Shown: in pieces, positions 3,701-50,404 of the stretch
How the letters are laid out: every line of letters begins with the position of its first letter
Position numbering within the stretch: the first letter of the stretch is position 1
Origin: Ylistrum balloti
Taxonomy: Eukaryota
Assembly: GCF_031769215.1 (NCBI RefSeq)
Contig: NW_026781975.1
Coordinates: 496,001-560,000, forward strand
Direction of reading: 5' to 3'
DNA length: 64,000 nucleotides
Made by a program: the position numbers and the translations under genes
Notes under the pieces: generated by a model
Database searches by the model: none
What the model saw: the letters and a program-made list of their open reading frames with translations, nothing else
What the model was told of the DNA's origin: nothing

Positions 3701-6700
3701 CTGAAGCTCGATAATTAATTGCTGCAACGCAAAACTACGAGTTATGGTAATTTTCTCTTATTGTTAAGTGTGTCTGTAGTCTCAGATCCTGGAATGTTAT
3801 CATCCTATAGACTTGAGATTGATAATTTATATCTGATACCTCACAGTTAGAAGGGAGTCTAATGCTTGCTGGGGCGGTCCACATGTTTGTTGGAATGACA
3901 GGAGTTGTCGGTATTCTATTACGATATATCGGTCCACTTACCATCGTCCCCACATTGATACTGGTCACCATCCCTCAGGCATCCTTACTGGTGAAATTCT
4001 GCGAACCATCCTGGACAGTTGCGGCCGTGTGAGTGTACTTGGAAGTATATGCATTTATCGAGTTATTGTAAATCTATTTATAAATGATTCCACTATGAAC
4101 AGCTACATGGCAAGCTAGTTAGACTTGTAAATAAACAACAAAGGCTCAATATGAATTGAAATTGGCCGTTTTTATTAACGACGTATATATATACATAAAT
4201 GTACATATGTAAACTCTCATGAATGTACATCATATACCACCTAGGGAAAGTTATCTCTGTGGCGTTTTTTGATCCCCATCTTAGACTTGTTAAATAATTT
4301 TTCATAACATTGTTAACAGGAACATTTGGTATATGATGTACATTCATGAGAGTTTACATATGTACGTTTATGTATATATATACGTCGTTAATAAAAACGG
4401 CCAATTTCAATTCATATTGAGCCTTTGTTGTTTATTTACAAGTCTAACTAGCTTGCCATGCCTTTTCTTTGATTATGATTATTTGCATCTTGGCTTAGTG
4501 ATGTAATTTGTTCCTCCAATATGACATATGTTGCAATAGTGGGACATAGTTTTGTAAAACGCCTTGACCGCGCGCTCGAGGGTTCATTGTCAAACCTAGG
4601 ATTTGATAACAATCCAAAGGATATTGATGTGCAGTGTATTGGCAAAAGTGGAGGCAAACGCACAATATCTTATCAGTTACGACTCATACGGCCGGATTTG
4701 GTTTTGCTACAAATCGGAGGTAACGATTTAGACTGTGTGCGTTTTAACGATGTCAAGGTCTCCGTAGTTAACGACTTAATGTCGATTGTCGAGTGGCTTT
4801 TCAGCGGTCTATCTGTTACAAAAGTTGGTATTATGCAACTTTTCTATCGACGGCGTACTAGACATATACCAGTTCATGTATATAATGACATGGTCGCAAT
4901 GTCAATAAACTTTGACAGCAAATCATTTAAATGAAAGATGCTACTGACCTTGTTCCTCCATAATGTCCGAAAGGTCTCTGACCAGTGGTGGTCAGTGCCC
5001 TTTACTTATATGGCATGCTAAAAATAGCATCAAATTACTGCATCCCTAGACCTATCACCTCCTTCCAAACGGTTAGCATCCGTTCATACATAACATAACC
5101 ACAACCATGATATAATTCCATCTATAAACTTAGTCAACATAACAAAGAAATAAAATAAATGTGGAACATTCATAAATGACATTAAACCCATGATTTAATA
5201 AGTATATATAACATCTGGAATTCGTCAGTTTTATTTTATAGAATTTTTCCGTAGTGCTGATCTTAATTCATCGTTGTTGATACACAAATGTAATATAGTA
5301 GAATGCCGCCATGCACTGTCATGTTTTGTGTAACTAGACGGATAACATAAAAACCAAGATTCAAAATGTTAGAACACCATGAAGTATTGAAACATAACAT
5401 TTCAATTTTCGAAATTATTGGCATGAAGATATACAACTTGAATTCCAACTTTTGATTTTCTACCATATTAACTCTATTTACAGAACAGTGCTGTCCACTT
5501 TAGTGTTTTCAATGTACCTAGGCGAAAAGACTATGCCTATACCAATTTGGAGAAAGAATGGTGGCTTTATATTATTGCGTTATCCTATACACAAGGTTCT
5601 TTCCGTACGTTTACACAAGTATTCGTTAATCACTTTTCATATATCTGAAATATATTAAATTTTCCATTTAATTGAGTAACCTGATTGGACAAAATTAGTG
5701 ACAATTAATGAAATAGAAAGGAGACTGCTGAAATGTTACAGACAATATTGCTAATCATAAATGTTAATCAAATGACGTGATAGTATCAACATCATCACAA
5801 ATGTTAATGCTATCAAAAATATAAATTTACAGTTTCCTGTGCTTATAATCACTTTAACTGTGGATGTATAAACGCCATAAGAAATTTAAGATCTGAGTCA
5901 GTTATGTTTTCTTTGTGTATAATAGATTATTTAATCAAGAAACTACATGTGTTAAGAACTGGAATCATGTGACTTTTTTCTTTATGAAAGAGTTGACTAA
6001 TATACACAAATGTTTACTTGTCAGAATTATTTTTGTTAACTAGGTACTACTTGGTATCGTCGCTGGTTTGTTTATATCCACAATTTTAACACTAACGAAT
6101 GTCTTCAGTAATGATGTAAATAGTCTAGATTTCCGTGCAAGGATTGATTCTGCCGGTAGTGATATAGTGACTTCTCCGTGGTTCTACCTCCCTTATCCAG
6201 GTAAAGTATCAACATGCCTTTCGGTCTAATCAGTGGCGGTATATCGAATTCATATAATTAATATATCTGATAGTAATTAACTTGCATATTATGGCATTTC
6301 ATTTAAAGATGATATTGCGGCGAAGCATTTGTTGCATCACCTCTAACTTCTTATAACAATGGCAAAGTATATATATCCATTGTCTTTCAATACCCACATC
6401 GCTAATTTTATATATTTGTCTAGATAAAAAGATATTTACTCCATGCCTCTATGGTAACCAACTATTTTTTTATATATATATCAGGACAGTTTGGCTCCCC
6501 TACAATCAGCGTTGGTATATTCATCACATATTTGATACCGACATTAATTTCAATTTTGGACTCGATTGCGGATTATTATGCATGCGCCAAAGTAGTCAAT
6601 GCGCCACCTCCACCTTTCCATGCTATTACCAGAGGTCTTGCCACAGAGGGTTTCTTCAGCTTTTTAGCGGGAAGTTTCGGTGTGGGCCATGCAACTACGA

Positions 6701-9700
6701 CATACGGTGGAAACATTGGGATCATTGGAGTGACGAAGGTATATATTTATAGTTTCAGTGCAATAAATGCTTTGAGTATATTTAGATGAATAATATTCTT
6801 TCCGAATTTCCACTCTCTAGTAATGCGATATCATCATCAGCCTTTTCACGTTCTACAATTTAGATTTATTCATATTATATATCGTAAAATCATGCATATT
6901 ATGGTATTTCCTGACTAAATAATTACAAAATCTAACTTTTCTGAAAGAGCAATTTTGACTGATTATCATTTCATTTATAAGTTTGTGGAAGAAGAGTACC
7001 ACGAAAACAAATTTAACTGTCTCAATACAAATGTAACAAATAGTATTCATTGCTTAAAAATGATTTCTTGGATCCTTGCTGATGTCTTTAATCCAAAAAT
7101 AAAAGTCAATGATTACAACCCAAAAAAATCACCAATTACGGGGATCAATAAAACTGATCATGATATATGACGACATGAACGTTGGTATGAAATAGTATAT
7201 ATAAACATCCATGTTCTAGTAATGGATTTTGATGAACATTATTAAAAGTAATATTCTTTAAGTAGAGGCTTACAGTGTTTTTTTCACTTTCAAAATAATA
7301 TGTCGATATGGAATTCGAAATAGACATTTTTTTTTTATTTTTGAAAGACATCAGTGTGGATGAACAAATGGGTATATTTTTCTATGACGTGGGGGCGTAA
7401 AACAGGTAATATTACGTGCGTACAAAGTAAAGATAGCGAAATGTGTTCACGTTAAGTGGACATATAATAATGTCCAGTGTGTATATTTTTCTATCCTGTT
7501 AACACGTCATAAAAGCTAAATATTTTTACATACGTACGTAATAGAAAAAATATAAATGGATATCCCGTCTGTGTCTCCGTACAAAACTACCATCAGATTG
7601 CATTCAGTTTCTTCTGCAAATGATGAGGTGACTATTCAAATGAAATTGTTTTTGCAAGTTTATTTTCAGTATTGCAGATGTACTGTCACTGTCATGCTTC
7701 ATACTGATCTAATACAATAACCTCCCCTCTATCCGTATATTACTCAGCCTTTTTTATAGCTTATTTTCCTAAAATAGTGTTTCAGGCGAACGATTTGTTT
7801 TTTGAAATTACGACATTGCTTATATATTTACTTTCAGTTAATAATGTACTTCTTAGTCACATATTTAAACTCATGGTTTAACGTCTACCACTGCTCAGTT
7901 TCTGTAGAAATTCTTATCTATATTACAAACGACCTAGTATAAACATTTTAAAACCTCTGGGCCCCGTTAATGCTGAATCTTGATAAAAACCTGGACCTCT
8001 AAGCTTTGTCATAACTATACATTACAGATTAGATATGTCGCCTTTATTGCTACCATGTGTTGTTAGTAGAGAAGATTCACACTTGAAATATACCCCCATA
8101 ATGCTGGTTGTCGAATCCCTGCATACAAAAAGCATGCGTCCACAACAGCCTAGTCTGACAAACATGAAAGTATAATCCATGTACTGCAAATCTATCAGGT
8201 GCATAAAATGATAATGATAAGCATATTATCTTCAACTCATTGAATGAAGTTTTCCTGTATGACTTGAAGAACCTGAATGTATGACTTAATATAAAGAAAG
8301 CGAAACAGTGTCCGACTGACCACGTTTGGAAAACGTAGAAAAACAACCAATAATTCGACAGGATGATATATATCTGCTGAAAAGGCGTGGTGATCAAACA
8401 ATCCCATTTCAAATCAGCGAGATAGGAGAGGTAAACATCAAATGATACACATATTTTATCGAATTGCCTTCAATTATAAGACAATGAATAGTAAGACTTT
8501 TTTCCAGGTTGGCAGCCTGCGAGTTTTTCAGATGTTTGGAGTGCAATTGGTGGTGGTGGCCATGATTGCGAAGTTGTCTGCTTGCTTTGTTGCTATTCCA
8601 TATCCAGTAATTGGTGGCACCACCTTCATAATGACGGGGTCGTTCTTTGGTATCATCTTCTCAAACCTCAGCTTTGTAAATCTTAATTCAACGCGGAACC
8701 TTGTCGTTATTGGAATGTCCCTTCTCTGCGGTCTAATGATCCCACTTTGGTCGAAGCAAAACATGGACAAGTTGGAAACAGGTATGATTAAGATAGAATG
8801 CACCTCCATTAGTTAATTTAAGTAATGCAAACACTTTAAAATGGTAAACGTTGATATCAGTTGAAACTAGAGTTGAGATACTCTTGCGAGCGAGGGTCCC
8901 GCCAGTGGAGACTAGCCTCTCTCCTGCCTAGCCTCCAGGAACCGATACACACTGGCTAGAAAAGTGGTTGTATTTATACTAGCCATTATAATAAACTTAT
9001 TAAGTACTATTACATATTAACTAACAGGTAACCAAGGATTGAGTAATATTTGAGTTATGGAGTTATGGTCTTACACACATAAATCGCAATAGATTCGGCT
9101 GTTTACTACAAGGTAAGGTTACACTGACCTTCCTACAAACTGCTTAGATAGGCTTTAGGTAATGACTTATATATTCAGGGAACGAATTAATACATGAACA
9201 TGTGTAGTAGATCAACAGCGACAGAATGCCTCTGGCCACTGGTCAATACAAAATTGTTCACAGTAGATGTCAGTGATAAATTAACAAAGGCAGATACATT
9301 ATGAAGAAATATCTTACTTATGTCTAGCACAATTATGGAATGATTAATCTTACATATTAATTTTTAATGGTTCATTTTATGGTCGACATAGTGATCTCAT
9401 AGAGAAAAATACCATTTCTTTGTGTGACATGAAGCTGGACGTATTTGACGCTCGTTACTTTGCCAGTTGATTCCGTTGTTGTTTACCTTGTTCTCATTTG
9501 AGCTCGTGACATAACTTACTTGGATTGACCGATGAAGCAGAAGACGCGTACTCTTCCAGAACACCTGGTCTTAATTTCCTTGTACTTTTTTCAGGAGTCG
9601 CCGCGTAAATCGTTCTTTTGTTCATATCTTGCCCATGTTAAAGTTTGGATGATGATTATATTGACATATTGATATTTTCGTGTTTTTTTCATATGTATAA

Positions 9701-12504
9701 ATGATGTTTCCTCGATATTATACGGGTGACGAAATAGTAAAAATGATCGACTTTCTAGTTGACAACATTTTCATCGAGTTTGGTTGTAAGATATTCAAAT
9801 GGACGATTGGCATACATATGGGATCCAACTGTGCTCCTCTGTTGGCTGACTTGTTTTTGATCTCACACGAGGCTGAATTTATTGAAGAGCTTATGAAAAC
9901 AGATTACAAAGACATTGTAAAGTCGTTTAATTTCACTTTTAGATATATTGATGACGTCTTGTCTGTACGTTACAAGAAATGTTTTGACCATGTCAATCGT
10001 ATATACCCACCTGAAGTGGAAATAAAAAACACGGCAGACTCTTCTACGTCAGCCGCTTATCTCGATCTTTTCCTACAACGAAATCAACATGGACATCTTT
10101 CCACCAAGCTGCATAGTAAACATGATGATTTCAATCCCTTTATTATTTGTCCATCTCTGGATAACAACATCCATGCTTATGGTGTTAACAATATTGCAGT
10201 TGATTTTTAAATAATGCAGGTTGCTGCAAATTATAGGGACGTTCTATGGTCGTCATAGTTATCTCATGATATTTCTTAGTGCTGTATAAAGCTGTACATA
10301 CTTAATTCTTGTTCTCATTTGAGAAAGCGACATTACTTACTTGAATTGACCAGGTTTACACGGCGCGTATCGTCGATGAAGCAGAAGACGCTTACTCTAC
10401 CGAAAGACATGGTCTCCCTATTCTCCTTGTGCTTTCTCAAGAATATTTCTTTTGTTCATATTTTGCCCTAGTTTTATGGAATTGGAGTGTAGGTTTATGT
10501 TTTGGGTTGTTTTTTTGTTTTCGTATGGGGTAACAAGTTGGTTTTTATGCATTTACGTATCTAATCGTAAACTTTGGTTTTTAACACTCGACGAACTCGA
10601 GTGTACAAATGACGTGTATTCTCTAGAAGATGAATAGAAACTGAAAATCAGAAGTGCATTGGATTTTTAATATTAATAAACGTTTCTCTAATTTTATCAC
10701 ATCCTATCAAATCGTTCATTTCAATCAATAATGACGTTTCGAGGTAGGATTATTGAGTTGTAAGACTTTAAATGTGTCTGTGTGGTTACCTGTCAAAATG
10801 CTTATTCATATCAATTACAAGTGTTCATACCTGAAAAGATATAATTCTTCTTTACCGTAGATAAAAGAATTAAACATGATCGAGGAGATTCGGACTTCAC
10901 AGCAGTTGACAGCACGGTTATTTGAAATGGGATTTATTCATCATTCTTTACAAAACTTTCAGTGAATGTAAGAGAAAATATCATGTGACAGTGTAGGACA
11001 TTTTTTATGTTTTGGGAAAATTAAACCTCTCATATTTCTTGACATTCTCTCATTATATATGCTTATGTTTAACCTACCTCAAATAGGAGAAACGTGGGAC
11101 GGATCACTAAGATCGACAGCAAGATTCGGCTATTCGATGTCAGATTATAATGCCATAGACAACGTCGATCATCTGATTAAACAGAGTGATAAGGTGGTTG
11201 CCATGTTTTGTTTAGCGTCAAAATAATTGTCATGGCAACCTATTGACGCTTCGTGCATATATCGATGATTTTATCATAAAGGTTTACCAATCAAAAATTA
11301 GTTTTATTAGCATCATTTTAGAATCATTAAACATACAGCGCCGAAATATGTACAAAAACTTTTAAGTAATAGACGCAACTCATAAAAAACGCATACTACA
11401 ATCTTGTTTTGTGAAGGAGAGGAGACTTTTTATTGTTTCCAAACTTATGCCGTGATAATATGCGATGGAAGCGTTTGATTAATGTGCAAGTAAAATAGTT
11501 GGGAGTACATATGTATAATGATCGACAAAGTAAAGAAACAAGCAAATGAACAAAGGCAAATCTATATAGATTGCGTTTGATGAACGTAAATGTATTATAT
11601 GTCATGGCATAAAGTATTTAGTATTATTTATTTAGAAAGTGATATTAAATATCGTTTTGCCTTGTACCCATTGATTACTGATAACTGATTACTGATGGTA
11701 ACTTGTGTCCTCTTGCCTAGACACTGGTCGTTATAGACTATTACAGAAATAGGTCCTTGGTGGACAATTATAAGCTGAAGAAGTTTAAATTTATAGTTTT
11801 ACGAAGTTCAAATGTCATTCATAGTGTCATAAATTTCAATGGGTAACAACAGTTTGCTTCTTTGTCATTGATGAATTCCTTAAGTTTAAAACAGTTTTAC
11901 CGAAGCTTTTAGTCATCTTACTAATTTGCACTAAATTGTTGCTATTTTTGTCAACTTTTGTTTTAATTAGGTATACAACAGTTAACTTATCTAGTGAAAA
12001 TTCTGATGACAAACGCCAGCTTTATGGGTGGATTGGCAGCATGCCTCCTCGATAACACCTTACCGGGTGAGAGTGTGATAAATATCAAATACATAGCCTA
12101 TTCAGTCCAAAGTTCATGCTTTAGAAAGCGTATCGTATATATCAAATAAATTGAAATATCAATCTGATTTTATCATCGCAATTGATTTCATTGTATATAT
12201 AATTATTATCCAACTGTCCCCAGAAACTATCAAGTTTATCGTTGCAACGACATCGGTGAAATTTTGCTGGGTTAACCGCTATACAAATTCCCAGTAATGC
12301 CTTATACTAATGACTTTTTATTTTTCAGGAACGCGCGAGGATCGAGGGATACTGGCTTGGAAGAATGATTTAAATGATGAAGAAACCGATACCCCAGACT
12401 ACCAGGAAAACACAGATGTATATAACATACCAGTTATCACGAGACTGCTCAAAAGGTACAGACTGACAAAGTATATTCCAATCTCTCCAACATTCAAACA
12501 TTAG
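259..12504 (+). CDS. SLC23-family (nucleobase-ascorbate transporter, NAT/NCS2) gene, 5'-truncated by the window edge; exons 259-344, 3500-3585, 3847-4028, 5484-5604, 6044-6200, 6485-6738, 8508-8781, 11971-12066, 12329-12504 (stop)
   Basis: All exons have AG/GT boundaries with consistent phases. Translation gives RLPVYQG..., LLRYIGPLTIVP, PWFYLPYPGQFG, LDSIADYYACA, the NAT signature region TYGGNIGIIGVTKVGS, and LLDNTLPGTREDRG, colinear with vertebrate SLC23A1/A2. The exact orthologue cannot be assigned. Confidence 0.93.
698..753. repeat. Compound (TA)n(TG)n microsatellite
   Basis: Directly visible in the sequence. Confidence 0.97.
780..1920 (+). mobile_element. Degenerate Penelope-like retroelement (Neptune-type: RT C-terminus, Cys knuckle, GIY-YIG) in an SLC23 intron
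   Basis: Frameshifted translation gives WKQYLDDCFMIW (YLDD at 903), HPTHTKRNIPFCLARRI, KCGDSRCGTCEYI (Cys knuckle), an NLIYVIVCPTC GIY-YIG-like segment, and a terminal KFVKIFKPALN. Confidence 0.85.
2064..2118 (+). ncRNA. Decayed type-I hammerhead ribozyme-like motif at the 3' end of the Penelope-like element
   Basis: Stem I is AAATGTAT-CGC / GCG-(GA bulge)-ATACATTT. The core reads CTGAAAA (consensus CUGANGA, so G8 is replaced by A). Stem II is GGCC-GTTA-GGTC, followed by GAAA, a palindromic stem III AACGTT, and the cleavage triplet TTA. Confidence 0.6.
2553..3415. repeat. Intronic minisatellite of ~26-bp G-run-headed monomers of two alternating types
   Basis: Monomers GGGGGACACTCTGCCTTCATACTTAA and GGGGG(G)CAATGTATCTTACTACTGAA are interspersed, with more degenerate copies at the flanks. 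Confidence 0.9.
4106..4460. repeat. Long inverted repeat (foldback): 134-bp arms 4106-4239 and 4327-4460 with an 87-bp spacer
   Basis: The arms are reverse complements with one mismatch found by manual comparison. Confidence 0.95.
4521..4934 (+). mobile_element. Truncated SGNH/GDSL hydrolase ORF, probably retroelement-derived (Ngaro/DIRS-type or CR1/L2 esterase)
   Basis: Block I VAIVGHSFVKRL, a block II-like GKSGG, and block III LQIGGNDLD are present. The block V DxxH motif is missing. The ORF is intronless and lies inside an SLC23 intron. Confidence 0.7.
8020..8420 (-). mobile_element. Possible heavily decayed non-LTR (CR1/L2-like) RT fragment
   Basis: The minus-strand translation has weak RT-like segments (LGCCGRML..., TTHGSNKGDISNL resembling GVxQGDxLS). 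There are many stops. Confidence 0.3.
9489..10468 (+). mobile_element. Penelope-like RT fragment (9701-10210) flanked by related direct repeats (9489-9634 and 10310-10468)
   Basis: The ORF contains FLVDNIFIEFG, IGIHMGSNCAPLLADLFL, FRYIDDVLS and AAYLDLFL. Both flanks share TGTTCTCATTTGAG...GATGAAGCAGAAGACGC..TACTCT..C.GAA..ACxTGGTC...TTGTTCATATxTTGCCC. Confidence 0.85.
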
Positions 12505-13844
12505 ATGGAAAATTCTCAGGGATTTATACCAAGATACAGTGATGGAAAATGCACCGATTTTTAGAAACATATCTTGGCTGCGGTCGCTGTTGATTACTGA
12601 ATACGTTTTAAGCAGTTAAGTTCAGAATTGTTGAATACGTAGATATTACCAATCAGTTATAATGTACTATTCATTACTCTGTATTAAGAGAAATGTGACT
12701 TCAACAGATATACATAGGACCTATATCAATTAGTTCTCATGCCTGTCCCAATATTGTATGTTTTAGAACAGTTTTCAGACTACTAGTAATTTCTCAAAGT
12801 CAAGTTCATTTTAAAAAGCAATTGTTAATCACTTTCTATAGCTGTCCCTGAATTTCATATATTTTTTAAATGCCTCTTTAAAGATAATTTGAACAGTAAT
12901 ATAGCGTTGCTGTAGCACATCTTTGTTCTGTACGGTTTTCTGAAAATTATTATTAAACGGATTTGCAATCTTAGTTTACATACAGAGCTTTTAACAAATT
13001 TCATTTAAACATTATTTACACCAAGGTGCTATATATTCAAATTAGAAAAATCATTAGAAACGATTGAACGCCATAGAGCGTCGATCATGATCAATATTAA
13101 TACAGTATCATTGTAATAAATAATCGCTTAATACTAAATACAATAAAACAAATGTTTTTCGTTGGGAATGTCTTTCTGTTGAATACGTAGATAACCTATA
13201 TTCACGAATTTATGCATCCACGAACTGATAAACAGATGCAAGTTGACATGGATGATTTGTTGAGCGAAGTTTATCCGCAAAATCAAGCACCAACGGAAAT
13301 TGCATATATTTGGAAAGCCACAAAAGTTAAGCATTTCTGAAGATAATTTAACAGTAATTAATATCAGGAACTATTTTATCCGTTGTAATTATGTAATTGT
13401 TGTAGTGTTACCAGACAATTCACTTAATTAAAAGTTCTGTTATTGTGGTCATATGTTTGTGATGTTTACATAATATACACTGCAACCACATAGACGACAG
13501 AAACTTTACAAAATTGTGATGGACGAATTACTCAACTCATCACTGAAAAATATCCTGATCAAAGATTACTTAACATGGACGTAGATATGAACCCATTTCA
13601 ACTTCGACACTTAGAATGCCCCAATAGATCTGGTGAATCCAATGCTAATTTGACAGAGAAATAATCAACAAACTTGTTATGCAACAATCATCTACAACTG
13701 ATAATGATATTTTTCGCATATCAAGCATTATTTTAATTGTATGATATGGCAATACGATGACGTTCGTTAATAAATGTTCTTATTGGTAAGGAAATTATAA
13801 AAATACACTTTGACCTTTGTCATGCGATATAGTTATAAATAAAG

Positions 13845-16800
13845 TCATACTATGAACATATTTGATTCATGGCCATATATCAAATGTTTTCTTTTTATGA
13901 ATATGCTGTTTAAATATGGTATTGCGTTTATCGACAAAACTATGGGAATAAACAAATTGCAACCGAATACAAAAATTTCCGTTATTTGAGAATCATAGAT
14001 AGAGTAGTAAATATATAACGCAGGTCTCAATATTACCATAATTAATGCATAAAACATAAAACAGTCACTTAGAAGTCCATTGGCACCGCAACAAACGTCA
14101 CAGTGAGTACCATCTTCTGTCAAACAGTTCTTGAATATAGCACATTGCTGCCCTGAAAATAGATAACATCATTTGATTAGCTTCTTAAAAATGATGACAA
14201 TCTAGAAACTAAAATGGGTGTTATCATAGATGACTCGTAAGTCAATATGGCCACTTAGTGACGTCACGTTATTACCTTGTGATCAAGAATATGTCAAGTT
14301 AATGCACTTCATGGAAAGCTATCTTGATTAATCTTGATTAAAAATGAGTTAATGGGAGACAGTAATGCAAAATTTTAATATGTCTATTTAGAAAATATAC
14401 ACAATTATCTAGTTATATATATAAGGTAGTTTTCGTAAAGCATAATAAATAAACTACTTGTTGTAAATTTATTGATATATTATATGTAAATTTACAACCA
14501 ATTCTGTACATCAAATAAACATACAAGTAGATACATAAACAAGATAACTACCTATATACATTGTTTAACACCTTGAGGCCATCTTTAGGCAATAGCATTA
14601 CTGTCGTCATAACAACATTAGTAGGAGGCCGTGACTATTAACAGGACGAGGTTGATAATGATGATATCGGTACGGCTTAATTAAGTTCCATTTAAACGTT
14701 CCACATCAATTCCCGTTTTAGTATATTTCAAGAAATATTATCTGGTAAATAAGTTAAAGAGCCAGACCCACTCCGTTATAGATATTTTTTCATATTTTAT
14801 TGACTGGAAATGTTGTTGTATACTAATAGATAATATATAAATAAAGACTTGTATAAAGTTTTGAACTTGAAATTGAAAAGGTACCGGAGATATCGGTGCC
14901 GGAATTAGTCTCATTTATCAACACCAGGATATGAATATCGATGAGGAAAAGCCACGTGATACGCTCAGACGCGTTCAGAACCAAAACCAAAATGGAGGAG
15001 GAGGGGAGTAGTACGTCGATGTGACATCGCTTGTAAAGAGATTTTACCGATAAATGCAATCAATTCTCTATATATGTATGGGAATCATCTGACGTATGTA
15101 TTGATAACATCTTTCAATGTTTAGATATGACACAAAAACGTGCAGATTACGAGAAAAACTAAGATTCATTGCAAAGAGGCCCTCAAATGGGGGCTACGAT
15201 ACGGTAACGAACATATAGATCATCGCGCAATGGATCTATCTGAATATATTCGATGATAAGAGTATTTATGAATATGATTTAGAGTGATACTACACGAGAG
15301 AGCCAAACAGAGAGAGATACTGAGTATGAACCAGCCATCTTCCTTCTTTTCGCCTCAGACTTCGTCAAAACATGTTTTGTTCCCCGCTTCCCTCGGACGC
15401 GTTCTGCCATGTTGGAAGACGGCATATTTATTTACAGTTCTTTGCACATGCGTCAGAAGTCAGGACTTCCCGCATAATCATGAATTAGCACTGAGTCGCT
15501 TCGAATTATTTTTTAAAACTATTTATTACGTTAGATAGGTAGCGATTTACTTCAAAATTGCGGTATTGCAGGGTTAGTCAGAACTTTTGCTATCCGAGAA
15601 AAGTAGAAAATCATGATTTTTTTTCATATAAAATAATATCGGTCGAGGAGTAGGTCTGGCTCTTTCACTAAAGTGTACATATTTTTTTTTTAATATTATG
15701 AAGTCGGATATCCTAACAGTAATTGTTATTAAGTCGTTATGCCAGAACAGTTAATTGTTATACTTTTGCGATACGTATAGAAGGTGATACTCTACATATA
15801 CAAACAAATTCACTTTAAAAACATATATCCTCAACTGGTTTCTGCATATACTAAGAAACAAAATAAAACATTCTGAGTCATGGCGAATTTTTCACTACTT
15901 TTGCTTTTTTGTTTTATTTTGGGAAAAAATTATTTAAACATCGGCCTGACATGATATTATTGTAATAGGATACCTTCAAGAAATCAGCGTGTGGATATCC
16001 GAGTAAAATAAGGATGATATTTCTTATTATCGTATGTATAACTGTGAACTGAGGCACTCTACGTACAACGGCAAAAAGCTCCCTTGATTTTTAATAGTGT
16101 TTATTGTCTGTAATATTTAATTCCATTAATGAAAATACAATTAAGTGAGTAGATATCACTGTGTTTATATATACATTTACTTGATCATTCCCTGTTTATT
16201 CTGTTGAAAGACTTCAACATTGAGTACTTTATTAACGTATTCATACATAGAGAGTTCAATTTTCTATAAGAGAAACCTGGACGGCGAATGCTTCATTAAT
16301 GTGTATGAATGATATCATTGATACATGTATACTGAGTGCTATAAAGCCTTAACTGATTTACAAGCTGGCAATATACTCACATTTTCCATCGGTTAGTGAT
16401 AATATACATAACGCTGGTACGTATATACCCAATGTTTCCATCAGAACAGGAATAGTCTGTTCCCGCGCCGCTTGTAAACAGGTCGGCAGAGTGACATGAT
16501 GGAGAGATTCAATGATAGTAGTGAATGATATATCACGGTTTGGTGGCCAATAAACCCAGCCCATGATACAGGTAACAATACAGAAGTATACAATACCTCC
16601 ACAATACAGCATTTTTCGTTTGTCTGTGAATGAATTGTTTAATGGTGTCTGTCCCATTAAAACAACAAAATGTACTACTGATAGAACGAGGGATAACATA
16701 CGAAAATCCCCACAATACTCGATATATTCAGCATTGTCTTGGCCTTCTTCATGTTGTTGAATGGAATTGCGTGGCACACAATTGTATATATGCCTTTCGT

Positions 16801-17041
16801 GAAAAGTATTTCTCCATCCGTCTGTACTATTGAATAGAGCAATAATCAAAACACTTTGCACAGATAGCCCTACTGCGGATATCAATAAAATTGTAAATAA
16901 ATTCTGACATCTTGACCGAAAAGCTATCATTCCAAATGTGATCTGTATCACAAACAAGACTACAATCGTGACAATAACGGCTGAAGCCTGTAACAAAAAC
17001 CCTACACCTGTAGGATCCATCATGGCGGCCGCCATATTCAT
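13845..17041 (-). CDS. Candidate two-exon seven-transmembrane (GPCR-like) protein of ~322 aa; exons 17041-16381 and 14152-13845
   Basis: A 242-codon non-repetitive open frame holds five hydrophobic segments and ends at a strong donor (AAAT|GTGAGT, phase 1). An acceptor TTTTCAG|GG at 14152 is phase-compatible and opens a 102-codon frame with two further hydrophobic segments. Canonical DRY and NPxxY motifs are absent. Confidence 0.45.
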
Positions 17042-18749
17042 GTCAGACTGTACATGAACGTAGATATTCGAAAGATCAACTACCAATAATTAGAAATCCA
17101 TTGTTTTGTGGACACGCATCAACAACCACTATCACTGTAGGCTACGGAAACACAGGTGTGTACACTATACATTGATGCTACGTATATATACATACAATGC
17201 TCTTGTTATATTACAGTTCATATACCCCATAAACCTAATCGTACATACTTTTATATCCTGGAGAAGTGAACTGTAACATATTGACATCCTTATCTGTTAG
17301 GGGAGCTACCTCTATCAACAGGCCTATACATATACAAACACACAAACCTGATCTGTCAACATTTCGCTTGTCGCTACATTAGAGATATCTCCTATATCAC
17401 GTGGTTTCGTACATAGGTCACTTACACCACGATATAAACCGGTAAGCACATGTTTAGCTCCATCGCCATATTATTTTTAAATATCGCTGTCTGCTTCGCG
17501 TGCCTTCATTCTACTGAATTATAACCTTGATATCGCTACGATTGCACAAGCTAGTGTTGTATTAACTTAATCCTGATGGATCATCCTATTCAAGCGTAAT
17601 GCACTGTAAATGTGAAGCTGTACTATGGTGGATTCAATGCCTTTAGCTACAGTTGTTCTATGTTTCAAATTTCTTTATTTCACTCCAGAGCATATGTGTG
17701 CTACTGATCGATATCATCTATAATACCGGGAGTTCTAATACTAGTACATGGAAAATACACTTGTAGCAACAGTGTAACTATCTAATTACGACCGTCTAGA
17801 CTATGTGCAGGTACAAACAGTTCTGTTATGTGTTTATACTTGAATACTTGAAGTACTGAAGCATGTGTTATTCATGCAGCGTATTATTTTACGTGGATTT
17901 GACATGGGAAGAAGTTTCGGTGTCAGCTCGGGTGATGTGTTACAAAGTTCACGGCTGACACCTGAACCTTGATAAACAGTACACGCGTACACTGTTTGTG
18001 TGACGGATGTATCGAGAACATATATTACAAACAACACTACTGTTAGCTCACTTAATGGTACCCCGAACTATTCTAAGGCATAGCCATACTAGGAAAAGGA
18101 AGAAAATAATAAACAATTTTATAAAAGTATGTAAATTAGCCAACAATACATCCTTAATTAGCGCGTACAGTGTCATCTATACATAGATATGACCGATCTG
18201 TCATCCCTAGATTTGCAGTAAACGCATGTCGTTAGTGCAAAGAACATTATGTGAATGTATAGATACATTGTATGTACTATGGGTGTTTATCATCTCCCAC
18301 ATTTCTATGTAAGCATGTAGTTGTTTGGTTCATCAGTCTTTGCTAGTTCTGCCTATCTGACATTTTCTGTAAGATTTATATTCTTGGTGGTTGTCGGTGT
18401 TGTGTGTCAATATATTTACCTGTATATGAGATGTCATCGGTGAAATATATCAAAAAATACCAATGTTTGGAAATTTATTTATGCATTCAATATTTTTTTT
18501 AACTTTCTACTCGTTTGATTGATTAATGTACAGTCGTGAGTGAAGTCATAAAAGTTTGAAATAGTTACATGCTGTCAGCAAACAGTAAATGCAGTCGATA
18601 TTACCAAATAACAAAATGTATTGTAACATCTGGACTGGTTGCTCTTTATCAAGAAATAGTGGTTAAATTAAAAAATCATATAAAGATCAATAACATCAAT
18701 AACTGAAACTTTGATGCAGATCACGTGACAATCGTCTAATATCTACGTT

Positions 18750-19301: not shown

Positions 19302-22300
19302 ATGGATAATAACAACGGAGCTACTAAACCGGAAGTGTTGATGCAGGAAAAGGGGGAAATCATCAAACCTGTGATACCTGAAGGAGCTGTGGAGGATCTT
19401 GTACGTAAAGTATATGGCCTAGATGTAAAGAGCTGTAAAGAATTGAATAGCTATGACGACAGGAACTACCACGTTACAGTACATGACAGTTCTAATAATA
19501 CTCACATACCGGAAGTGTGGAAAGATGGCTATATTTTGAAGATATTAAACAGCATGGATTCCAAACGTCCTGTCATCGTTGGTAAGTTTATGAAAACAAA
19601 AGATACACGAGGCAGAGTTTTGAACTTCAGTAATTAAAAGCATGGTGATATAATATTGACTTAAATGCACAGCTCTGCAAAAGAGACTGATTAGCAGAAA
19701 TATAATGTAAAGAAGAACCTTACTGATGACAATTATGTTAATGTTAAATTATGTAAAGAATTCTACATCGATTTCCCAAGGATCTATTAGACCTGCAGAT
19801 TTTACCAAGCATTCATGTTTGATTTACAGAAGCACAGAACAGTCTGTTGAGTCATCTCCGCAAACAAAACATGTCAGTGCCAGAAAACGTCCTCACCTTG
19901 TCGGGCGAGTCGATGTCTCTACAAAAGGTTTTTGTGGAGAAAGAAGTAAAAGGTATTATAGTGACATTTGTGATCGTCTACTAAAACTTACAAATGTAAT
20001 AAGATGGTCTCGTATAGCAGGAGGAAATTGATAATCTGTGATTTCAAACATGCAAAAGTACACCACCCGTTGTTGTTTACTTTGTACACATTTGGGAACG
20101 CTGAATGTATTACTTGTGTAACCATGATAAATACTACACGCAAGATACCTCTCGATTTGAAAGAACTTCTGTCTAGTAAGCCAGGGGCCCCGGGTTCGAA
20201 TCTTAGCAGCTCTGATTAAATACTAGCCGCAATATGCCGCGGGATAGAACTTCTATCTAGTAAGCTCGATCGATTGAACGTCAGACAAGTAAGCCAGGGG
20301 TCCTGAGTCCCGAATCTTAGCAGAGGCATTGCCATAGATAATGACGTGTGTTACGCTTGGATTAACCCGACTTTCAATCGCGCGTGTGGTCGATGAAGCA
20401 GACGATACGTACCATTCCGAAACACTGGTCTTATTCTCCTTTTAGGTTCCAGTGGTTTCCGTCTAGTTTCCCTCTTTTCATAGGTTTTTACCTTAAATTA
20501 AAATTCTGTGTACACGTGGGTAATTTCGATGTTGTTTCTATATCCTTAATTATCTATCGTTTGATAAGATATAACTTAATAAACTATAAATAATAATCTT
20601 TATAATACATGTATATGAATTTAACAAATAATCTGCTACTTATTCCGTAAATAATATTGCATAACATATCCTAGTCTGTGAATTACTTACCGATAAGCAA
20701 TGCTTCTTAAATCATATTTGCTAATGTCATTGTTACATGAACTGTTAGATGTAGCCAGTTTTTATTCCAGTCATTTCTTCCTGACGATATCTTACTGGTT
20801 GGCCATCAGCGTGTGCATCATCATCTCGAATATTTTTCAGAACCAGACAGTGCCTTGTATGGTACCTATATTGTGCGCATGCTCAAATACATCCCCGGAG
20901 ACATCCTGTTCAGCAAACCATGTACGCCTGGTTTGTTATACAATGTCGGCAGATTCATTGGTAAATTTTCGAACGCAACGAAGGTAAGTACCGGATCTGC
21001 AAAAAGTATTTCACATCTGTATTTAAATAAGAATGCTTCAGAATATTTTTGTCGCTTTTCATTATATCTACAAAACAGTAAGAGATTGCTGTTGTACAGG
21101 GTACGATGAATACAAGAGTGGTACACTCATTAAATGTCTCTGGGATAGTCACTTTCATATACACGGATATATTATACATATTGAATGTTGCTTAAATTAA
21201 GCTTGCGATGAAAGTTTAAATAAGTCGGAGACGTGAATCGGACTCAGGCGCGCACCTTATGCATGACATTATATAATGGCATCAGTTAAAAATATGACAA
21301 GATTGCATTTTGTTGTTAGATATTGACGTTCTATTCCAGGGTTTTCATCATCCGTTTTATGATACACATTCCCTTGTTTGGAGTCTGCTAGAGTTTTCAA
21401 AGCTGAAAGAATTTGTATTTGTGGTGAAAGACGAAAATGACAAACGTGTGGTTGATGAGGTCATATCTGCGTTTGAATCCAATGTTCTACCAGTGCTTGG
21501 TAAACTCCAAAAAGGTTTGTTGGTACTGATGTGTAGACAACTTCTAATTAATTACATAATGTTGGTCCTCAGCATCATTGACGAGCCCTAGAAGGACGAG
21601 ACATATCTATGATGCAGTTTAAATCATTGCTTGGTTCTACTATTTCTAACTCTAATTTGCATTGAAAGATGCTATACACTTGTGCGTCTTTAGTACAACC
21701 TGGTAAGGTCATTTTGTGTAGATCATCCTGAATGTGAAAAACATTGCGGATTGATGATAACATTTTGAAACATATGTTACAACAAATATTAAGTTTGACA
21801 TTTATGTAGTTTGTTGTATTTGGTTTTCAATAAAGGTACCCGGTTGCTAGACTAGCGGTGAACAATTGTTAGTGAAAGTTCAACATATTATTCAACCTTT
21901 CTAGATATGTTGAGACGGAAAGGATTGATTTCGAAACATGTAATTTTGTCTGAAAACGTTTGAATTGTCCACTTACAACTTGTTATTGTTATCTAATTAT
22001 GTTTTCTATTTTCGGTGGCTTTTGATTGAAAAATTAACGCAAGTCATTTTTTTCATTTCAGGTGTGATACATGGTGATCTTAACGAGCAGAACATTCTCG
22101 TCATAGAGGAGCCCGGGCAGGATGACGTCACAACGGAAGAGCGTGTTTATGACGTCAGTGGATTACTGGATTTTATGGATGTGACCGATTCATACTGTAT
22201 ATTTGATATTGCTATCAACATCGCGTACATGTCAATAATTTGTGATCCCTCAGAGCAGCTCGACGCTGGCGGCCACATATTAGCTGGTCTGGTACCCGTC

Positions 22301-22531
22301 TTTCCTTTAAATGACGTCGAGTTGGATGTGTTACAGATATCGGTGTGTGCTCGGTTGTGTCAGTCTCTGGTGATGGGAGCTTACTCTAATTATCAGGACC
22401 CGTCTAATCTGTACGTGCTCACTACCGCTGAGAAAGGTTGGCCGCTCATACACAAACTATGGAATACACCCAAACATGTGCTGAAGGATAGGTGGCAGCA
22501 TCTGATTAACCGATATCGGGACACTGTTTGA
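19302..22531 (+). CDS. HYKK: Hydroxylysine kinase-like (APH/choline-kinase fold), copy 1, 396 aa; exons 19302-19581, 19830-19952, 20841-20983, 21340-21514, 22062-22531
   Basis: Phases are consistent and the total of 1191 nt has no internal stop. Motifs include ELNSYDDRNYHV, YILKILNSMDS, GVIHGDLNEQNIL, GLLDFMD, RLCQSLVMGAY and GWPLIHKLW. Confidence 0.9.
20150..20520 (+). mobile_element. Tandem tRNA-derived (Thr-AGT-like) SINE heads followed by a tail related to the Penelope-like direct repeats
   Basis: CTAGTAAGCCAGGGGCCCCGGGTTCGAATC (B box GGTTCGAATC) occurs at about 20171-20200 and recurs at about 20286-20327. The segment at about 20343-20440 aligns by eye to 10329-10430. Confidence 0.6.
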
Positions 22532-25108: not shown

Positions 25109-27042
25109 ATGAACCCTAGCAAGGAAGAGACCGACGGAAAAGAATTGTTGGTAAAAAAGGCAGTATCAATCAGACCAAAGATCCCCACGGGATTTGTGGA
25201 GGACATTGTACGTAACAAATATGGCCTAGATGTAGTGGACTATCAGGAACTGAATAGCTATGAAGACCGGAACTACCACGTGACTGTACATGACAGTTCT
25301 AATAATCCTTACGAACCGGAAGTGTGGAAACACGGCTATATTTTGAAGATACTGAACGCCGTTGATTCTCAATATCCTGCAATCATAGGTAAGTAGATAT
25401 AAAAATCCTTACATTTATAATTCAAAGTTCACATATACATTTGCACTTCATACATTGCGGAAATATGTTTAAAGAATGGTCACATTTGTCTCGATATCTA
25501 TAAAATGAGGTACCTTTTTAGAGTTATATTTGATGTATCAAAGTTATACAGTATGCTGATAGGAAGTGATCCTACGGATTTAGCCATGATAGCAGTGTTC
25601 TTACCCTAGAAGGTAAAAGTATCACTTGCTTCGGACCTGAGCCCTAGCACGGCGATACTGCTGTATTATGCAAATTATTTACTTATTTGGCATCAACGCA
25701 TTTAAATTCAAAAAGAACTATTTAATTGTCTTATTTTCAATCCTTTATATTGTCCGGCAACTTCCACAAACAACTTTGACAGAAAAAAAAGATATATATC
25801 TCATATTTGCTAAAAGCTGAGATGAGAAAAACATCGATCAGAATATTTCAGACTTGTATTCCATATCACAGACGATCGATGTTACGCTAATACATATAAT
25901 TGATAACATGTTTGTGCACTGCCTCTGAGAAGTATATGTGAAGTCATGACAAACCCCAGTCTGGTAAACACGTGATCGGTTAAAAGATATGGTAAAATCA
26001 AATCTTTAAGCAATATATCCAAAAAATTACAGAAAATACAGGCAAGAGTGCAACTATGGTATTGTGTTATAATTCAAGACCAACAAGCTTAAGCTGACCA
26101 TACGATCAACTTTAAACTGAAATGTTGTTGGAACTTCACTACCCACAATACACCTACCGCAGCACGCAATGAGAACTGTCGATCCGATTAATGGATTGAA
26201 AAATATTTTGATTGCCAAAACATCTTTAAAAGCTTTCATACTAAAAGTCTTAGATAATACAAATAAACTTACCAAGCATATACGTTAATGGTTTGAAACG
26301 CATGTGATCAAAACGTCGTTGAAAATTACAATTTTAACCTGTCAAGATAACAGCACGTTAAATATATGGTGTACCTGATTTCCAGTTTTACATTCGGGAA
26401 CTTTCGTCTCTTTCCTTGAACGAGAAATACATCGTCTCTTACAAGGAAGCAGTCACAAGGTCCCTATTTGGCGTGAAACCTGTCTCGTCTCCCAACTGCA
26501 ATAAAACTACAATGTTTGCATATACTAACGATAATGATAATTTTCATCAACCTGCATCTTTTGAAGCCTTGTGTTACGAAAATTAAAATGGGAACAGGTC
26601 CTTGAATATCGAATCATCTGTGTCTTGTAAATGCCATAAGTTAGAGATGCGGGAATATTGTTATCCAGAAATGGATAGAAAAGAAAACTGTTCCATCAGC
26701 TGGAAAGGTAATGGCCTCGGTTTTCTTGGATACTGATGGTATTCTGATGGTAGATTATCTGCAAAAGGTACAAACAATCAATGGCACATATCATGCATCA
26801 CTTCTTAAGCATTTAAGAGAAAACATTATACTCAAGTGCCGTGGAAAACTCAGTAAAGATGTGATGATTCACCAGGACAATGCCCCTGTTCACAAGTCTG
26901 TCGTTGCCATGGCTGTTAGTTGATTTATCTAAATTGTTATATATAACAGTCTTTTGTATGGTCATTTTGCATCAGCACACATTGACATCTGATATCATAT
27001 CTACCAGCCATTCCCTCCTTTCATCCTGTTCTTTAATAATTA

Positions 27043-27138
<96 letters not shown>

Positions 27139-30100: not shown

Positions 30101-30519
30101 CGGGGCAAGATGATGTCATACCAGCAGCACGTGTTTATGACGTCATAGGCCTACTGGATTTTATGCACGTGACCGACACCTATCGCATATTTGATATTGC
30201 AATTAATATCGCGTACATGTCAATCATTTGTGATCCCTCAGAGCAGCTCGACGCTGGCGGCCACATATTAGCTGGTCTGGTACCCGTCTTTCCTTTAAAT
30301 GACGTCGAGTTGGATGTGTTACAGACATCAGTGTGTGCTCGGTTGTGTCAGTCACTGGTGATTGGAGCCTTCAATTACTACCAGGACTCGTCCAACATAT
30401 ACGCACTCACCACAGCAAAGAAAGGCTGGCCACTTCTTCACAAACTATGGAATACACCCAAACGGGTGCTGAAGGATAGGTGGCAGTATCTGATTGACAA
30501 TTATAAGCAGACAGCTTGA
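25109..30519 (+). CDS. HYKK: Hydroxylysine kinase-like, copy 2, 396 aa; exons 25109-25388, 27728-27850, 28247-28389, 29178-29352, 30050-30519
   Basis: Exon lengths (280/123/143/175/470) and phases match copy 1. Motifs include ELNSYEDRNYHV, GVIHGDFNEQNIL and GLLDFMH. Confidence 0.9.
26685..26923 (+). mobile_element. Mariner transposase fragment in intron 1 of HYKK copy 2
   Basis: KTVPSAGKVMASVFLDTDGILMVDYLQK...HQDNAPVHKSVVAMA matches the mariner DD34D catalytic region. Confidence 0.88.
27043..27135. repeat. (CT)n microsatellite
   Basis: Directly visible in the sequence. Confidence 0.97.

Positions 30520-50346: not shown

Positions 50347-50404
<58 letters not shown>

What the first reader, a model, noticed from the sequence alone, without database searches (positions are those of the whole stretch)
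13845..17041. Cryptic two-exon seven-transmembrane protein lacking canonical GPCR motifs
Seen: the longest non-repetitive ORF in the window (242 codons, which I estimate is very unlikely by chance at this base composition) has five hydrophobic helices. One Cys precedes helix 3 (EYC-GDF) and another lies in the loop after helix 4 (LPTC), as in the GPCR TM3-ECL2 disulfide. It ends at AAAT|GTGAGT. About 2.2 kb downstream, TTTTCAG|GG joins in phase (T+GG = Trp) to a frame with two more helices (CFMFYALIMVILRPALYIYY; IFVFGCNLFIPIVLSINAIPY), giving ~322 aa. There is no DRY, NPxxY or class B/C signature, and the third intracellular loop is Cys-rich. Inference: an orphan or lineage-specific receptor, tail-to-tail with SLC23. 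This is the best candidate for an undescribed gene in the window.
Basis: partly seen in the sequence, partly recalled or inferred. Interest (0 to 1): 0.7.

Follow-up and report, generated by a model that had tools for sequence, protein, structure and literature searches.

The report
Scallop-only seven-helix membrane protein gene
This is a real scallop gene, already listed in RefSeq without a function, for a fast-evolving seven-helix membrane protein found so far only in scallops; it probably folds like a G-protein-coupled receptor, but nothing yet shows that it signals like one.

Summary
The window is from the scallop Ylistrum balloti, not human.

The gene is not cryptic. RefSeq protein LOC132544376 (320 aa, "uncharacterized") uses the same junction.

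An exhaustive HMMER search of 1.84 billion proteins found six relatives. All that carry a name come from scallops. They fall into three deep clades, and this genome has two members.

- **Conservation:** the phase-1 intron and the gene order APH–7TM–SLC23 are kept in Argopecten; the Mizuhopecten copies keep the intron and one also has SLC23 beside it.
- **Expression:** RNA-derived contigs show the Argopecten orthologue is transcribed and spliced at this junction, with an extra 5' non-coding exon.
- **Selection:** dN/dS is 0.26–0.49, and dN is about four times that of the neighbouring gene.
- **Family assignment:** no Pfam or PDB sequence match.
- **Structure:** the AlphaFold models are of low to moderate confidence. 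Their best structural matches are all GPCR-fold proteins (Z up to 15.1), but Foldseek finds nothing significant.
- **Conserved residues:** the two Cys at the positions of the TM3–ECL2 disulfide, and a cytoplasmic Cys cluster.

Verdict: an undescribed, lineage-restricted, GPCR-like 7TM family. Receptor function is inferred, not shown.

The parts
16381..17035 (-). Coding exon 1 (aa 1-218 plus the first base of codon 219), starting at the RefSeq ATG at 17035.
   Evidence: It is 100% identical to P0001 residues 1-218. Orthologues begin MA..., and the second ATG has A at -3 and G at +4.
14153..16380 (-). Phase-1 intron of 2228 nt, GT at 16380-16379 and AG at 14154-14153.
   Evidence: A single phase-1 intron at the homologous place occurs in Argopecten (865 nt), both Mizuhopecten copies (517 and 539 nt) and the Y. 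balloti paralogue.
13845..14152 (-). Coding exon 2 (last two bases of the Trp219 codon, aa 220-320, and stop TGA at 13845-13847).
   Evidence: It is 100% identical to P0001 residues 220-320.
14754..15665 (.). Dispersed repeat of about 912 bp inside the intron. It is not part of the gene product and accounts for much of the longer intron in this species.
   Evidence: at least 40 copies elsewhere in the genome at 86-91% identity, out of 252 first-look candidates.
16925..16981 (-). TM1 (aa 19-37)
   Evidence: Hydropathy; helices in the AF2 model.
16835..16891 (-). TM2 (aa 49-67). It follows the invariant ICL1 motif R42-C43-x-N45.
16640..16696 (-). TM3 (aa 114-132). It follows invariant Cys108 (codon 16712-16714) and Arg112.
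16553..16609 (-). TM4 (aa 143-161)
16478..16480 (-). Codon of invariant Cys186 in the loop between TM4 and TM5. With Cys108 it sits where GPCRs place the TM3-ECL2 disulfide.
   Evidence: The disulfide itself is inferred, not shown.
16391..16447 (-). TM5 (aa 197-215) with invariant Glu200 and Pro207.
14088..14144 (-). Cys cluster of the loop between TM5 and TM6 (C222, C228, C236, C239, C240). F225, C228, C236 and C239 are invariant across all three clades.
14007..14075 (-). TM6 (aa about 245-267) with invariant Arg261, followed by Pro in 7 of 8 sequences.
13899..13976 (-). TM7 (aa about 278-303) with invariant Asn294 and Asn300. The NAIPY motif occurs only in this subfamily.
3846..12501 (+). 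Neighbour: exons of the SLC23 / xanthine-uracil permease gene, tail-to-tail with the 7TM gene.
   Evidence: tblastn with the Argopecten neighbour; PF00860 next to the orthologues.
19326..22447 (+). Neighbour: APH-type kinase gene (PF01636), head-to-head with the 7TM gene. A second tandem copy lies at 25145-30435.

Best explanation
The stretch encodes a real protein-coding gene of the scallop Ylistrum balloti, RefSeq LOC132544376 (320 aa). It has two coding exons and probably one more non-coding 5' exon.

The product belongs to a small, fast-evolving family known so far only from scallops. The family has three deep clades, and this genome carries two members.

The protein is an integral membrane protein with seven helices, a short N-terminus outside and a short basic C-terminus inside. 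Its predicted helix bundle is arranged like that of G-protein-coupled receptors.

Shown here:
- the gene model;
- conservation of the family, the intron and the gene order;
- purifying selection;
- transcription and splicing of the Argopecten orthologue;
- seven hydrophobic helices;
- the invariant residues.

Inferred:
- Cys108 and Cys186 form the outer TM3-ECL2 disulfide.
- The protein sits at the cell surface.
- The variable outer loops (ECL1, ECL3) bind a ligand, and the better-conserved inner face passes the signal to a cytoplasmic partner. That face comprises ICL1 R-C-x-N and TM5-ICL3-TM6, with the cluster F-x2-C-x7-C-x2-C.
- The four invariant inner-face Cys may hold a metal ion or carry palmitate.

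Whether the cytoplasmic partner is a G protein is unknown.
For: Gene model:
- Exon 1 and exon 2 are each 100% identical to P0001, which uses the same junction.

Family:
- Exhaustive HMMER finds 6 relatives in 1.84e9 representatives. All named ones come from Argopecten, Mizuhopecten, Pecten and Ylistrum.
- hhalign gives subfamily A vs B 99.8% and the third clade 99.5%. The tree shows three deep clades.
- This genome holds only two members.

Constraint:
- A single phase-1 intron at the same place in all copies examined.
- Gene order APH-7TM-SLC23 is kept in Argopecten; SLC23 also lies next to a Mizuhopecten copy.
- dN/dS is 0.26-0.49.

Expression:
- Contigs from three sequencing runs match the A. 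irradians genome at 98-100% per block. The introns are removed with GT..AG in the sense of the gene.

Topology:
- Seven hydrophobic segments.
- K/R-rich ICL1, ICL2 and C-tail, against an acidic N-terminus and ECL3, in all 8 sequences. Most N-x-S/T sites fall in outer loops.

Fold:
- Both AF2 models have seven long helices.
- In an all-against-48,161-chain search, 49 of the top 50 for the P0001 model are GPCRs or designed GPCR-like folds, the exception being a viral rhodopsin at rank 32 (Z 10.0-12.8). For the paralogue model all 50 are (Z 11.6-15.1). Each match aligns 199-248 residues across all helices.

Invariant residues:
- C108 and C186, and C43, C228, C236 and C239.
- Between subfamilies the best-conserved parts are ICL1, TM5, TM6 and ICL3. 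The worst are ECL1 and ECL3.
Against: - No RNA data exist here for Y. balloti itself.
- The models have low to moderate confidence: mean pLDDT 54.5 and 58.8, from only 8 aligned sequences.
- Foldseek finds no significant match (best E 0.019 and 0.19).
- The Z values lie near the level the tool says helical bundles can reach without kinship.
- AlphaFold may default to a GPCR-like packing for any seven-helix protein.
- No Pfam GPCR family matches at E<=1, and there is no PDB sequence match.
- There is no DRY or NPxxY motif, and the tail is only 16 aa.
- Only two copies per genome is unlike expanded chemoreceptor families.
- dN/dS up to 0.49 shows weak constraint.
- Four Cys on one face and two on the other are both even numbers. 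Cys counting therefore cannot fix the topology.
Confidence: 0.6

Rival explanations
1. The protein is a seven-helix membrane protein, but not a signalling receptor. It might be a transporter or channel subunit, a membrane scaffold, or an ER/Golgi resident like other non-GPCR 7TM families. In that case the conserved polar residues in the membrane (Glu200, Arg261, Asn294) would line a pathway or an interface.
For: - No GPCR sequence family or motif matches.
- The tail and ICL2 are very short.
- There are invariant charged residues inside TM5 and TM6.
- Copy number is low and gene order is stable.
- Weak language-model leads point to non-GPCR 7TM families such as THH1/TOM1, GPR137 and PRRT3, all scoring below 0.9.
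- TMEM87A appears among the weak Foldseek rows.
Against: - The language-model leads were not reproduced with the paralogue, and none of those Pfam families matches at E<=1.
- The top structural rows are GPCR-fold chains, not transporters.
- Variable outer loops with a conserved inner face fit a receptor better.
Confidence: 0.3
2. It is a highly diverged member of an existing GPCR class (A, B, C, F or taste-type), whose sequence signal has been erased by fast evolution.
For: - Structural rows span classes A, B, C, F and T, with class C and T transmembrane domains near the top for the better model.
- Cys108 and Cys186 match the disulfide shared by these classes.
- The control shows that small profiles cannot link even class A to class C. 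A blank result is therefore weak evidence.
Against: - Pfam 7tm_1, 7tm_2 and 7tm_3 do not match any of 8 members at E<=1.
- hhalign gives under 1% against 30 scallop class A and 4 class C domains.
- HMMER over 1.84e9 proteins returned no GPCR.
- There is no DRY or NPxxY motif and no large N-terminal domain.
Confidence: 0.07
3. It is not a functional gene, but a chance ORF, a gene-prediction artefact, a pseudogene, or a transposon or viral ORF.
For: - No RNA evidence for this species was available.
- The RefSeq entry is a computed model.
- The intron contains a dispersed repeat.
Against: - The chance expectation is 0.0001-0.0014.
- Frames are intact in seven gene copies from four scallop genera, plus a third clade.
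- dN/dS is below 1.
- The intron and gene order are conserved.
- The Argopecten orthologue gives a spliced transcript.
- The gene has only two loci in the genome.
- No viral or transposon protein appeared among the HMMER hits.
- The repeat lies wholly inside the intron.
Confidence: 0.03

Closest known systems
GPCR-fold seven-transmembrane receptors (classes A, B, C, F, T), as a structural superfamily
   Same: - Seven helices, with the N-terminus predicted outside and the C-terminus inside.
- Invariant Cys before TM3 and in the TM4-TM5 loop.
- The predicted bundle aligns over 199-248 residues with GPCR chains of several classes (Z 10-15).
- The TM5-loop-TM6 region is conserved.
   Different: - No sequence or profile match to any class.
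- No DRY, NPxxY or CWxP motif.
- A 16-aa tail.
- An invariant Cys cluster (F-x2-C-x7-C-x2-C) in the third inner loop and R-C-x-N in the first.
- Coupling has not been tested.
Uncharacterized scallop proteins: LOC110445583 and LOC110445577 (Mizuhopecten yessoensis), XP_069139820.1 and XP_069139744.1 (Argopecten irradians), LOC117339935 (Pecten maximus), LOC132548467 (Ylistrum balloti)
   Same: These are true relatives: E 2.6e-66 to 7.3e-13, the same intron where examined, and the same invariant residues. For the subfamily A genes the neighbours are also shared: APH and SLC23 in Argopecten, SLC23 in Mizuhopecten.
   Different: Identity is only 41-45% within the subfamily and 22-25% between subfamilies. 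Subfamily B carries a 45-80-residue insert in the first outer loop. None has a described function.
Microbial (type 1) rhodopsins
   Same: Seven helices.
   Different: TM7 has no conserved lysine in the membrane. The only basic residue lies at the cytoplasmic end and is Arg in one clade. No rhodopsin appears in the top 50 for the better model.
THH1/TOM1/TOM3, GPR137, PRRT3 and UCP031277 7TM families
   Same: They are the nearest named clusters by protein-language-model features (scores 0.80-0.82), and have a similar size and helix count.
   Different: The scores fall in the range that shuffled proteins reach. None of these Pfam families matches at E<=1, and the leads were not reproduced with the paralogue.

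Membership tests
Class A rhodopsin-like GPCR (Pfam PF00001) | Sequence match to the 7tm_1 profile | tested here: not met
   No hit at E<=1 in any of 8 family members. hhalign against 30 class A domains from the same genome gives 0.3%. That test had little power, because the class A versus class C control was also blank.
Class A rhodopsin-like GPCR (Pfam PF00001) | D/E-R-Y at the inner end of TM3 and N-P-x-x-Y in TM7 | tested here: not met
   TM3 ends ...VVLMGQTPLNN. TM7 has S-I-N-A-I-P-Y in subfamily A only; subfamily B lacks the P-Y.
GPCR superfamily (fold level) | Seven transmembrane helices, N-terminus out and C-terminus in | tested here: met
   Seven hydropathy peaks. Positive-inside charge pattern in all 8 sequences, with most glycosylation sequons in outer loops. 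These are predictions only.
GPCR superfamily (fold level) | Conserved Cys pair linking the top of TM3 to ECL2 | tested here: met
   Cys108 and Cys186 are invariant in 8 of 8 sequences across three clades. The bond itself is not testable here.
GPCR superfamily (fold level) | Helix packing and order of the GPCR bundle | tested here: inconclusive
   VIA-align: 49 of the top 50 (P0001 model) and all 50 (P0005 model) are GPCR-fold chains, with Z up to 12.8 and 15.1. However, mean pLDDT is 54.5 and 58.8, Foldseek E is at best 0.019, and the Z values are near the tool's stated ceiling for unrelated helical bundles.
GPCR superfamily (function) | Ligand-dependent coupling to heterotrimeric G proteins or arrestins | not testable with these tools
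   It needs a cell-based assay.
Class C GPCR (Pfam PF00003) | 7tm_3 profile match and a large extracellular ligand-binding domain | tested here: not met
   No Pfam hit. hhalign against 4 scallop class C domains gives 0.1%. The N-terminus is only 18 aa.
Microbial rhodopsin | Retinal-binding Lys in the middle of TM7 | tested here: not met
   No Lys within TM7 in any member.
THH1/TOM1/GPR137/PRRT3 7TM families | Match to PF06454, PF27607 or PF25987 | tested here: not met
   No hit at E<=1. Atlas scores are 0.80-0.82 only and were not reproduced with the paralogue.
Scallop-restricted 7TM family (defined here) | Full-length similarity, invariant R-C-x-N in ICL1, the Cys108/Cys186 pair, E in TM5, F-x2-C-x7-C-x2-C before TM6, R in TM6, and a phase-1 intron after TM5 | tested here: met

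The most novel reading that the evidence does not exclude
The family is a previously unrecognised class of GPCR-fold surface receptors confined to scallops or their close bivalve kin. Its fast-changing outer loops would recognise a rapidly evolving ligand, such as a gamete, pathogen or conspecific cue. An invariant cytoplasmic cysteine cluster, binding metal or lipid, would replace the usual DRY/NPxxY switches as the signalling module.
Probability: 0.2. Interest if true: 0.6.

Novelty: new variant of a known kind. Interest (0 to 1): 0.35.

Why it matters
Lineage-restricted membrane proteins are a large unexplained part of mollusc genomes. Surveys of bivalve sensory genes collect GPCRs by Pfam domains (for example PMC11682238 uses PF00001, PF00002 and PF00003), so they would miss a family like this one.

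If the family signals, it would add a receptor class with an unusual cytoplasmic Cys-cluster module. It would also offer a tractable case: two genes per genome, clear orthologues, and a known transcript in Argopecten. If it does not signal, it is one more orphan 7TM family.

Tried and rejected
- **Pfam scans** of both exons and of all 8 members gave only scattered, inconsistent hits to hydrophobic families (DUF5090, DUF3290, BT1, MerC and others). I treated these as noise.
- **PDB sequence search** with the family profile found nothing at E<=10.
- **Word-index search** with the family alignment added no new relatives.
- **Foldseek against PDB** with both models found no match at E<=0.001.
- **ESM Atlas shape search** with my model gave TM<=0.5 and a mixture of 7TM and histidine-kinase membrane domains.
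- **Atlas language-model leads** (THH1/TOM1, GPR137, PRRT3, UCP031277) were not reproduced with the paralogue and are rejected as evidence.
- **hhalign** against class A and class C domains taken from this genome was blank. The class A versus class C control was equally blank, so the test has no power at superfamily level.
- **5' non-coding exon of the Y. balloti gene:** I tried to locate it by similarity to the Argopecten transcript. The UTRs are too diverged, and only chance-level matches appeared.
- **Literature:** searches for the locus names, protein accessions and one run accession found nothing.
- **Earlier scan notes** held nothing on this family.
- **Species of the third clade** (run SRR26445937) could not be identified.
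- **Alternative acceptor:** I looked for one that would restore the 6-7 residues present in the orthologues' ICL3. The frame upstream of the acceptor is open for only six codons and has no other AG, so the RefSeq junction stands.
Full report
**1. Observation**

The minus-strand ORF 16358..17086 has 242 codons. Every longer ORF in the window lies in the two repeat regions at 49.6-50.6 kb and 54.4-57.5 kb. With the window's composition (34.6% G+C, no N), 0.0001 to 0.0014 open runs of this length are expected by chance in six frames.

The sequence shows the following.
- In-frame ATGs at 17041 and 17035.
- The donor GGAAAAT|GTGAGT after 16381.
- The acceptor TTTTCAG|GG before 14152.
- A stop at 13845-13847.
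- A phase-1 join, T+GG = Trp.

A hydropathy scan gives seven segments.

**2. Identity and a note on procedure**

The word-index search with exon 1 returned one protein, P0001: NCBI 'uncharacterized protein LOC132544376 [Ylistrum balloti]', 320 aa. All later whole-protein steps used this public record by its id.

Inside scripts, exon pieces were concatenated only to check that they reproduce database proteins. dN/dS was computed exon by exon.

The window is from a scallop and not from human DNA. The gene is therefore predicted already and is not cryptic. RefSeq starts at the second ATG. This fits the orthologues, which all begin MA..., and the better start context (A at -3, G at +4).

**3. Relatives**

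Pfam gave nothing. Because the claim rests on the absence of relatives, I ran the exhaustive HMMER search. Among 1.84 billion representatives, only six other proteins reach E<=0.001. Every one that carries a name is from a scallop.

| Clade | Members | Identity to P0001 |
|---|---|---|
| Subfamily A | This gene; Argopecten irradians XP_069139820.1; Mizuhopecten yessoensis LOC110445583 and LOC110445577 | 41-45% |
| Subfamily B | Y. balloti LOC132548467; Pecten maximus LOC117339935; A. irradians XP_069139744.1 | 22-25% |
| Third clade | Known only from assembled reads of run SRR26445937; species not known | 23% |

- Subfamily B carries a long insert in the first outer loop.
- The Y. balloti member of subfamily B lies on another contig, G000:C32 at about 23.3-27.9 kb.
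- Profile comparison ties the three clades together at 99.5-99.8%, and the tree shows three deep branches.
- The Y. balloti genome holds only the two loci.
- A second word-index search with the family alignment added nothing.

**4. Evidence that it is a working gene**

*Intron.* All four subfamily A genes have a single phase-1 intron after TM5, of 2228, 865, 517 and 539 nt. The Y. balloti paralogue has a phase-1 intron splitting a Gly codon that aligns with the split Gly of the Argopecten and Mizuhopecten genes. The Y. balloti subfamily A gene has a loop 6-7 residues shorter at that point, and no alternative acceptor exists.

*Gene order.* In Argopecten the gene lies between an APH-type kinase gene (PF01636, head-to-head) and an SLC23/Xan_ur_permease gene (tail-to-tail), exactly as in the window. 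SLC23 also lies next to one Mizuhopecten copy.

*Selection.* Nei-Gojobori dN/dS is 0.26-0.47 between genera and 0.49 between the two recent Mizuhopecten copies. dN is about 0.43-0.50 between genera. The neighbouring APH gene has dN 0.099 over the same species pair. The 7TM gene therefore changes about four times faster at the protein level, yet remains under purifying selection. dS between genera is near or beyond saturation, so these ratios are rough.

*Transcription.* Three assembled contigs from runs SRR19746222, SRR19746223 and SRR19746227 carry the Argopecten ORF without the intron. They match the A. irradians genome at 98-100% in blocks separated by GT..AG introns in the sense of the gene.
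- A 5' non-coding exon at L010 7139/7188-7344.
- An exon at 9869-10695, which holds the ATG.
- An exon at 11559-12775, which holds the stop and about 0.9 kb of 3' UTR.
- Two of the contigs continue into spliced exons of the APH gene in the opposite sense. This shows that they derive from RNA and that the two first exons overlap antisense.

For Y. balloti itself no RNA data were available to me.

**5. Architecture**

The hydrophobic segments are aa 19-37, 49-67, 114-132, 143-161, 197-215, about 245-267 and about 278-303.

In all eight sequences the loops after TM1 and TM3 and the C-tail are rich in Lys/Arg, whereas the N-terminus and the loop after TM6 are acidic. Most N-x-S/T sites fall in the loops predicted to face outward. 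This supports an N-out, C-in topology.

Nineteen positions are invariant across the three clades.

| Location | Invariant residues |
|---|---|
| First inner loop | R42, C43, N45 |
| TM2 | G56 |
| Just before TM3 | C108, R112 |
| TM4 | Y150 |
| Second outer loop | L183, C186 |
| TM5 | E200, P207, L212 |
| Third inner loop | F225, C228, C236, C239 |
| TM6 | R261 |
| TM7 | N294, N300 |

Between subfamilies the best-conserved regions are ICL1, TM5, TM6 and ICL3. The least conserved are ECL1 and ECL3.

**6. Fold**

AlphaFold2 with the 8-sequence alignment gives seven long helices but low confidence for P0001: mean pLDDT 54.5, pTM 0.48. The Pecten paralogue is somewhat better, with mean pLDDT 58.8, pTM 0.58 and TM3-TM7 at 70-90.

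Foldseek against PDB finds nothing significant. The weak rows are all 7TM proteins, mostly microbial rhodopsins and GPCRs.

The Foldseek-independent search of 48,161 chains gives mostly GPCR-fold chains.
- For the P0001 model, 49 of the top 50 are GPCRs or designed GPCR-like folds, with Z 10.0-12.8. A viral rhodopsin sits at rank 32.
- For the paralogue model, all 50 are GPCR-fold chains, with Z 11.6-15.1. They include class A, B, C, F and T receptors and two designed GPCR-like folds.
- The matches align 199-248 residues over all seven helices.

The tool warns that helical bundles can reach about 13-14 without kinship. I therefore read this as follows: a GPCR-like packing is the best available description, at moderate confidence, and it is not proof.

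**7. Comparison with known families**

- No Pfam GPCR family (7tm_1, 7tm_2, 7tm_3 or any other) matches any member at E<=1.
- There is no PDB sequence match.
- hhalign of the family profile against 30 class A and 4 class C transmembrane domains taken from the same genome gives under 1%. The class A versus class C control is equally blank, so this excludes membership in those two classes but says nothing about the superfamily.
- DRY and NPxxY are absent. Subfamily A has N-A-I-P-Y in the inner half of TM7, but subfamily B does not.
- There is no membrane-embedded Lys in TM7, so the protein is not a retinal-binding rhodopsin.
- The language-model leads (THH1/TOM1, GPR137, PRRT3) are in the noise range and were not reproduced.

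**8. Most likely mechanism**

I think a surface receptor-like protein is the most likely reading. The variable outer loops, held by a Cys108-Cys186 bridge, would bind a ligand. The conserved inner face, ICL1 plus TM5-ICL3-TM6, would engage a cytoplasmic partner. The four invariant inner-face cysteines (C43, C228, C236, C239) would suit a metal site or palmitoylation.

All of this is inference. The main rival is a non-signalling 7TM protein, such as a transporter, channel subunit or scaffold.

**9. Verdict**

The family itself has no name, no Pfam entry and no literature that I could find. I class it as a new variant of a known kind, of moderate to low interest.

Noticed in passing
window 14754-15665: The gene's intron holds a dispersed repeat of about 912 bp. 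At least 40 copies lie elsewhere in the genome at 86-91% identity, out of 252 first-look candidates. It is probably a non-autonomous mobile element, and it accounts for much of the longer intron here (2228 nt, against 517-865 nt in other scallops).
   Followed up: partly
window 19326-22447 and 25145-30435 (+): There are two tandem copies of an APH-type kinase gene (PF01636, aminoglycoside-phosphotransferase fold). The first copy is 78-88% identical per exon, and the second 48-84%, to the Argopecten transcript's protein.
   Followed up: partly
L010 7139-7344 (Argopecten irradians genome): The non-coding first exons of the APH gene (minus strand) and of the 7TM gene (plus strand) overlap antisense. 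The shared stretch has a GT donor at each end, one per strand. An unstranded assembler therefore fused the two transcripts in contigs L007 and L008.
   Followed up: partly
L012 and L013 (Mizuhopecten yessoensis NEDP02000130.1, about 58-90 kb): The 7TM gene is duplicated head-to-head, with about 8.8 kb between the starts. The copies differ by dS 0.041 and dN 0.020, so the inverted duplication is recent.
   Followed up: partly
L011 (assembled reads of run SRR26445937): A third, very divergent clade of the family (P0012, 333 aa; 22-23% identical to either subfamily) comes from an unidentified sample. Y. balloti has no closer copy, so it is either from a bivalve outside the sequenced scallops or from a paralogue lost here.
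   Followed up: partly
window 49632-50632 and 54425-57513: All ORFs longer than the 242-codon one lie on both strands of these two repeat regions, which other first-stage notes describe as a His/Ser/Asp repeat and a 21-bp satellite.
   Followed up: no
G000, whole genome: At least 148 matches to the class A GPCR profile PF00001 at E<=1e-20, most in single open frames. Only 5 matches to the class C profile at E<=1e-35.
   Followed up: no
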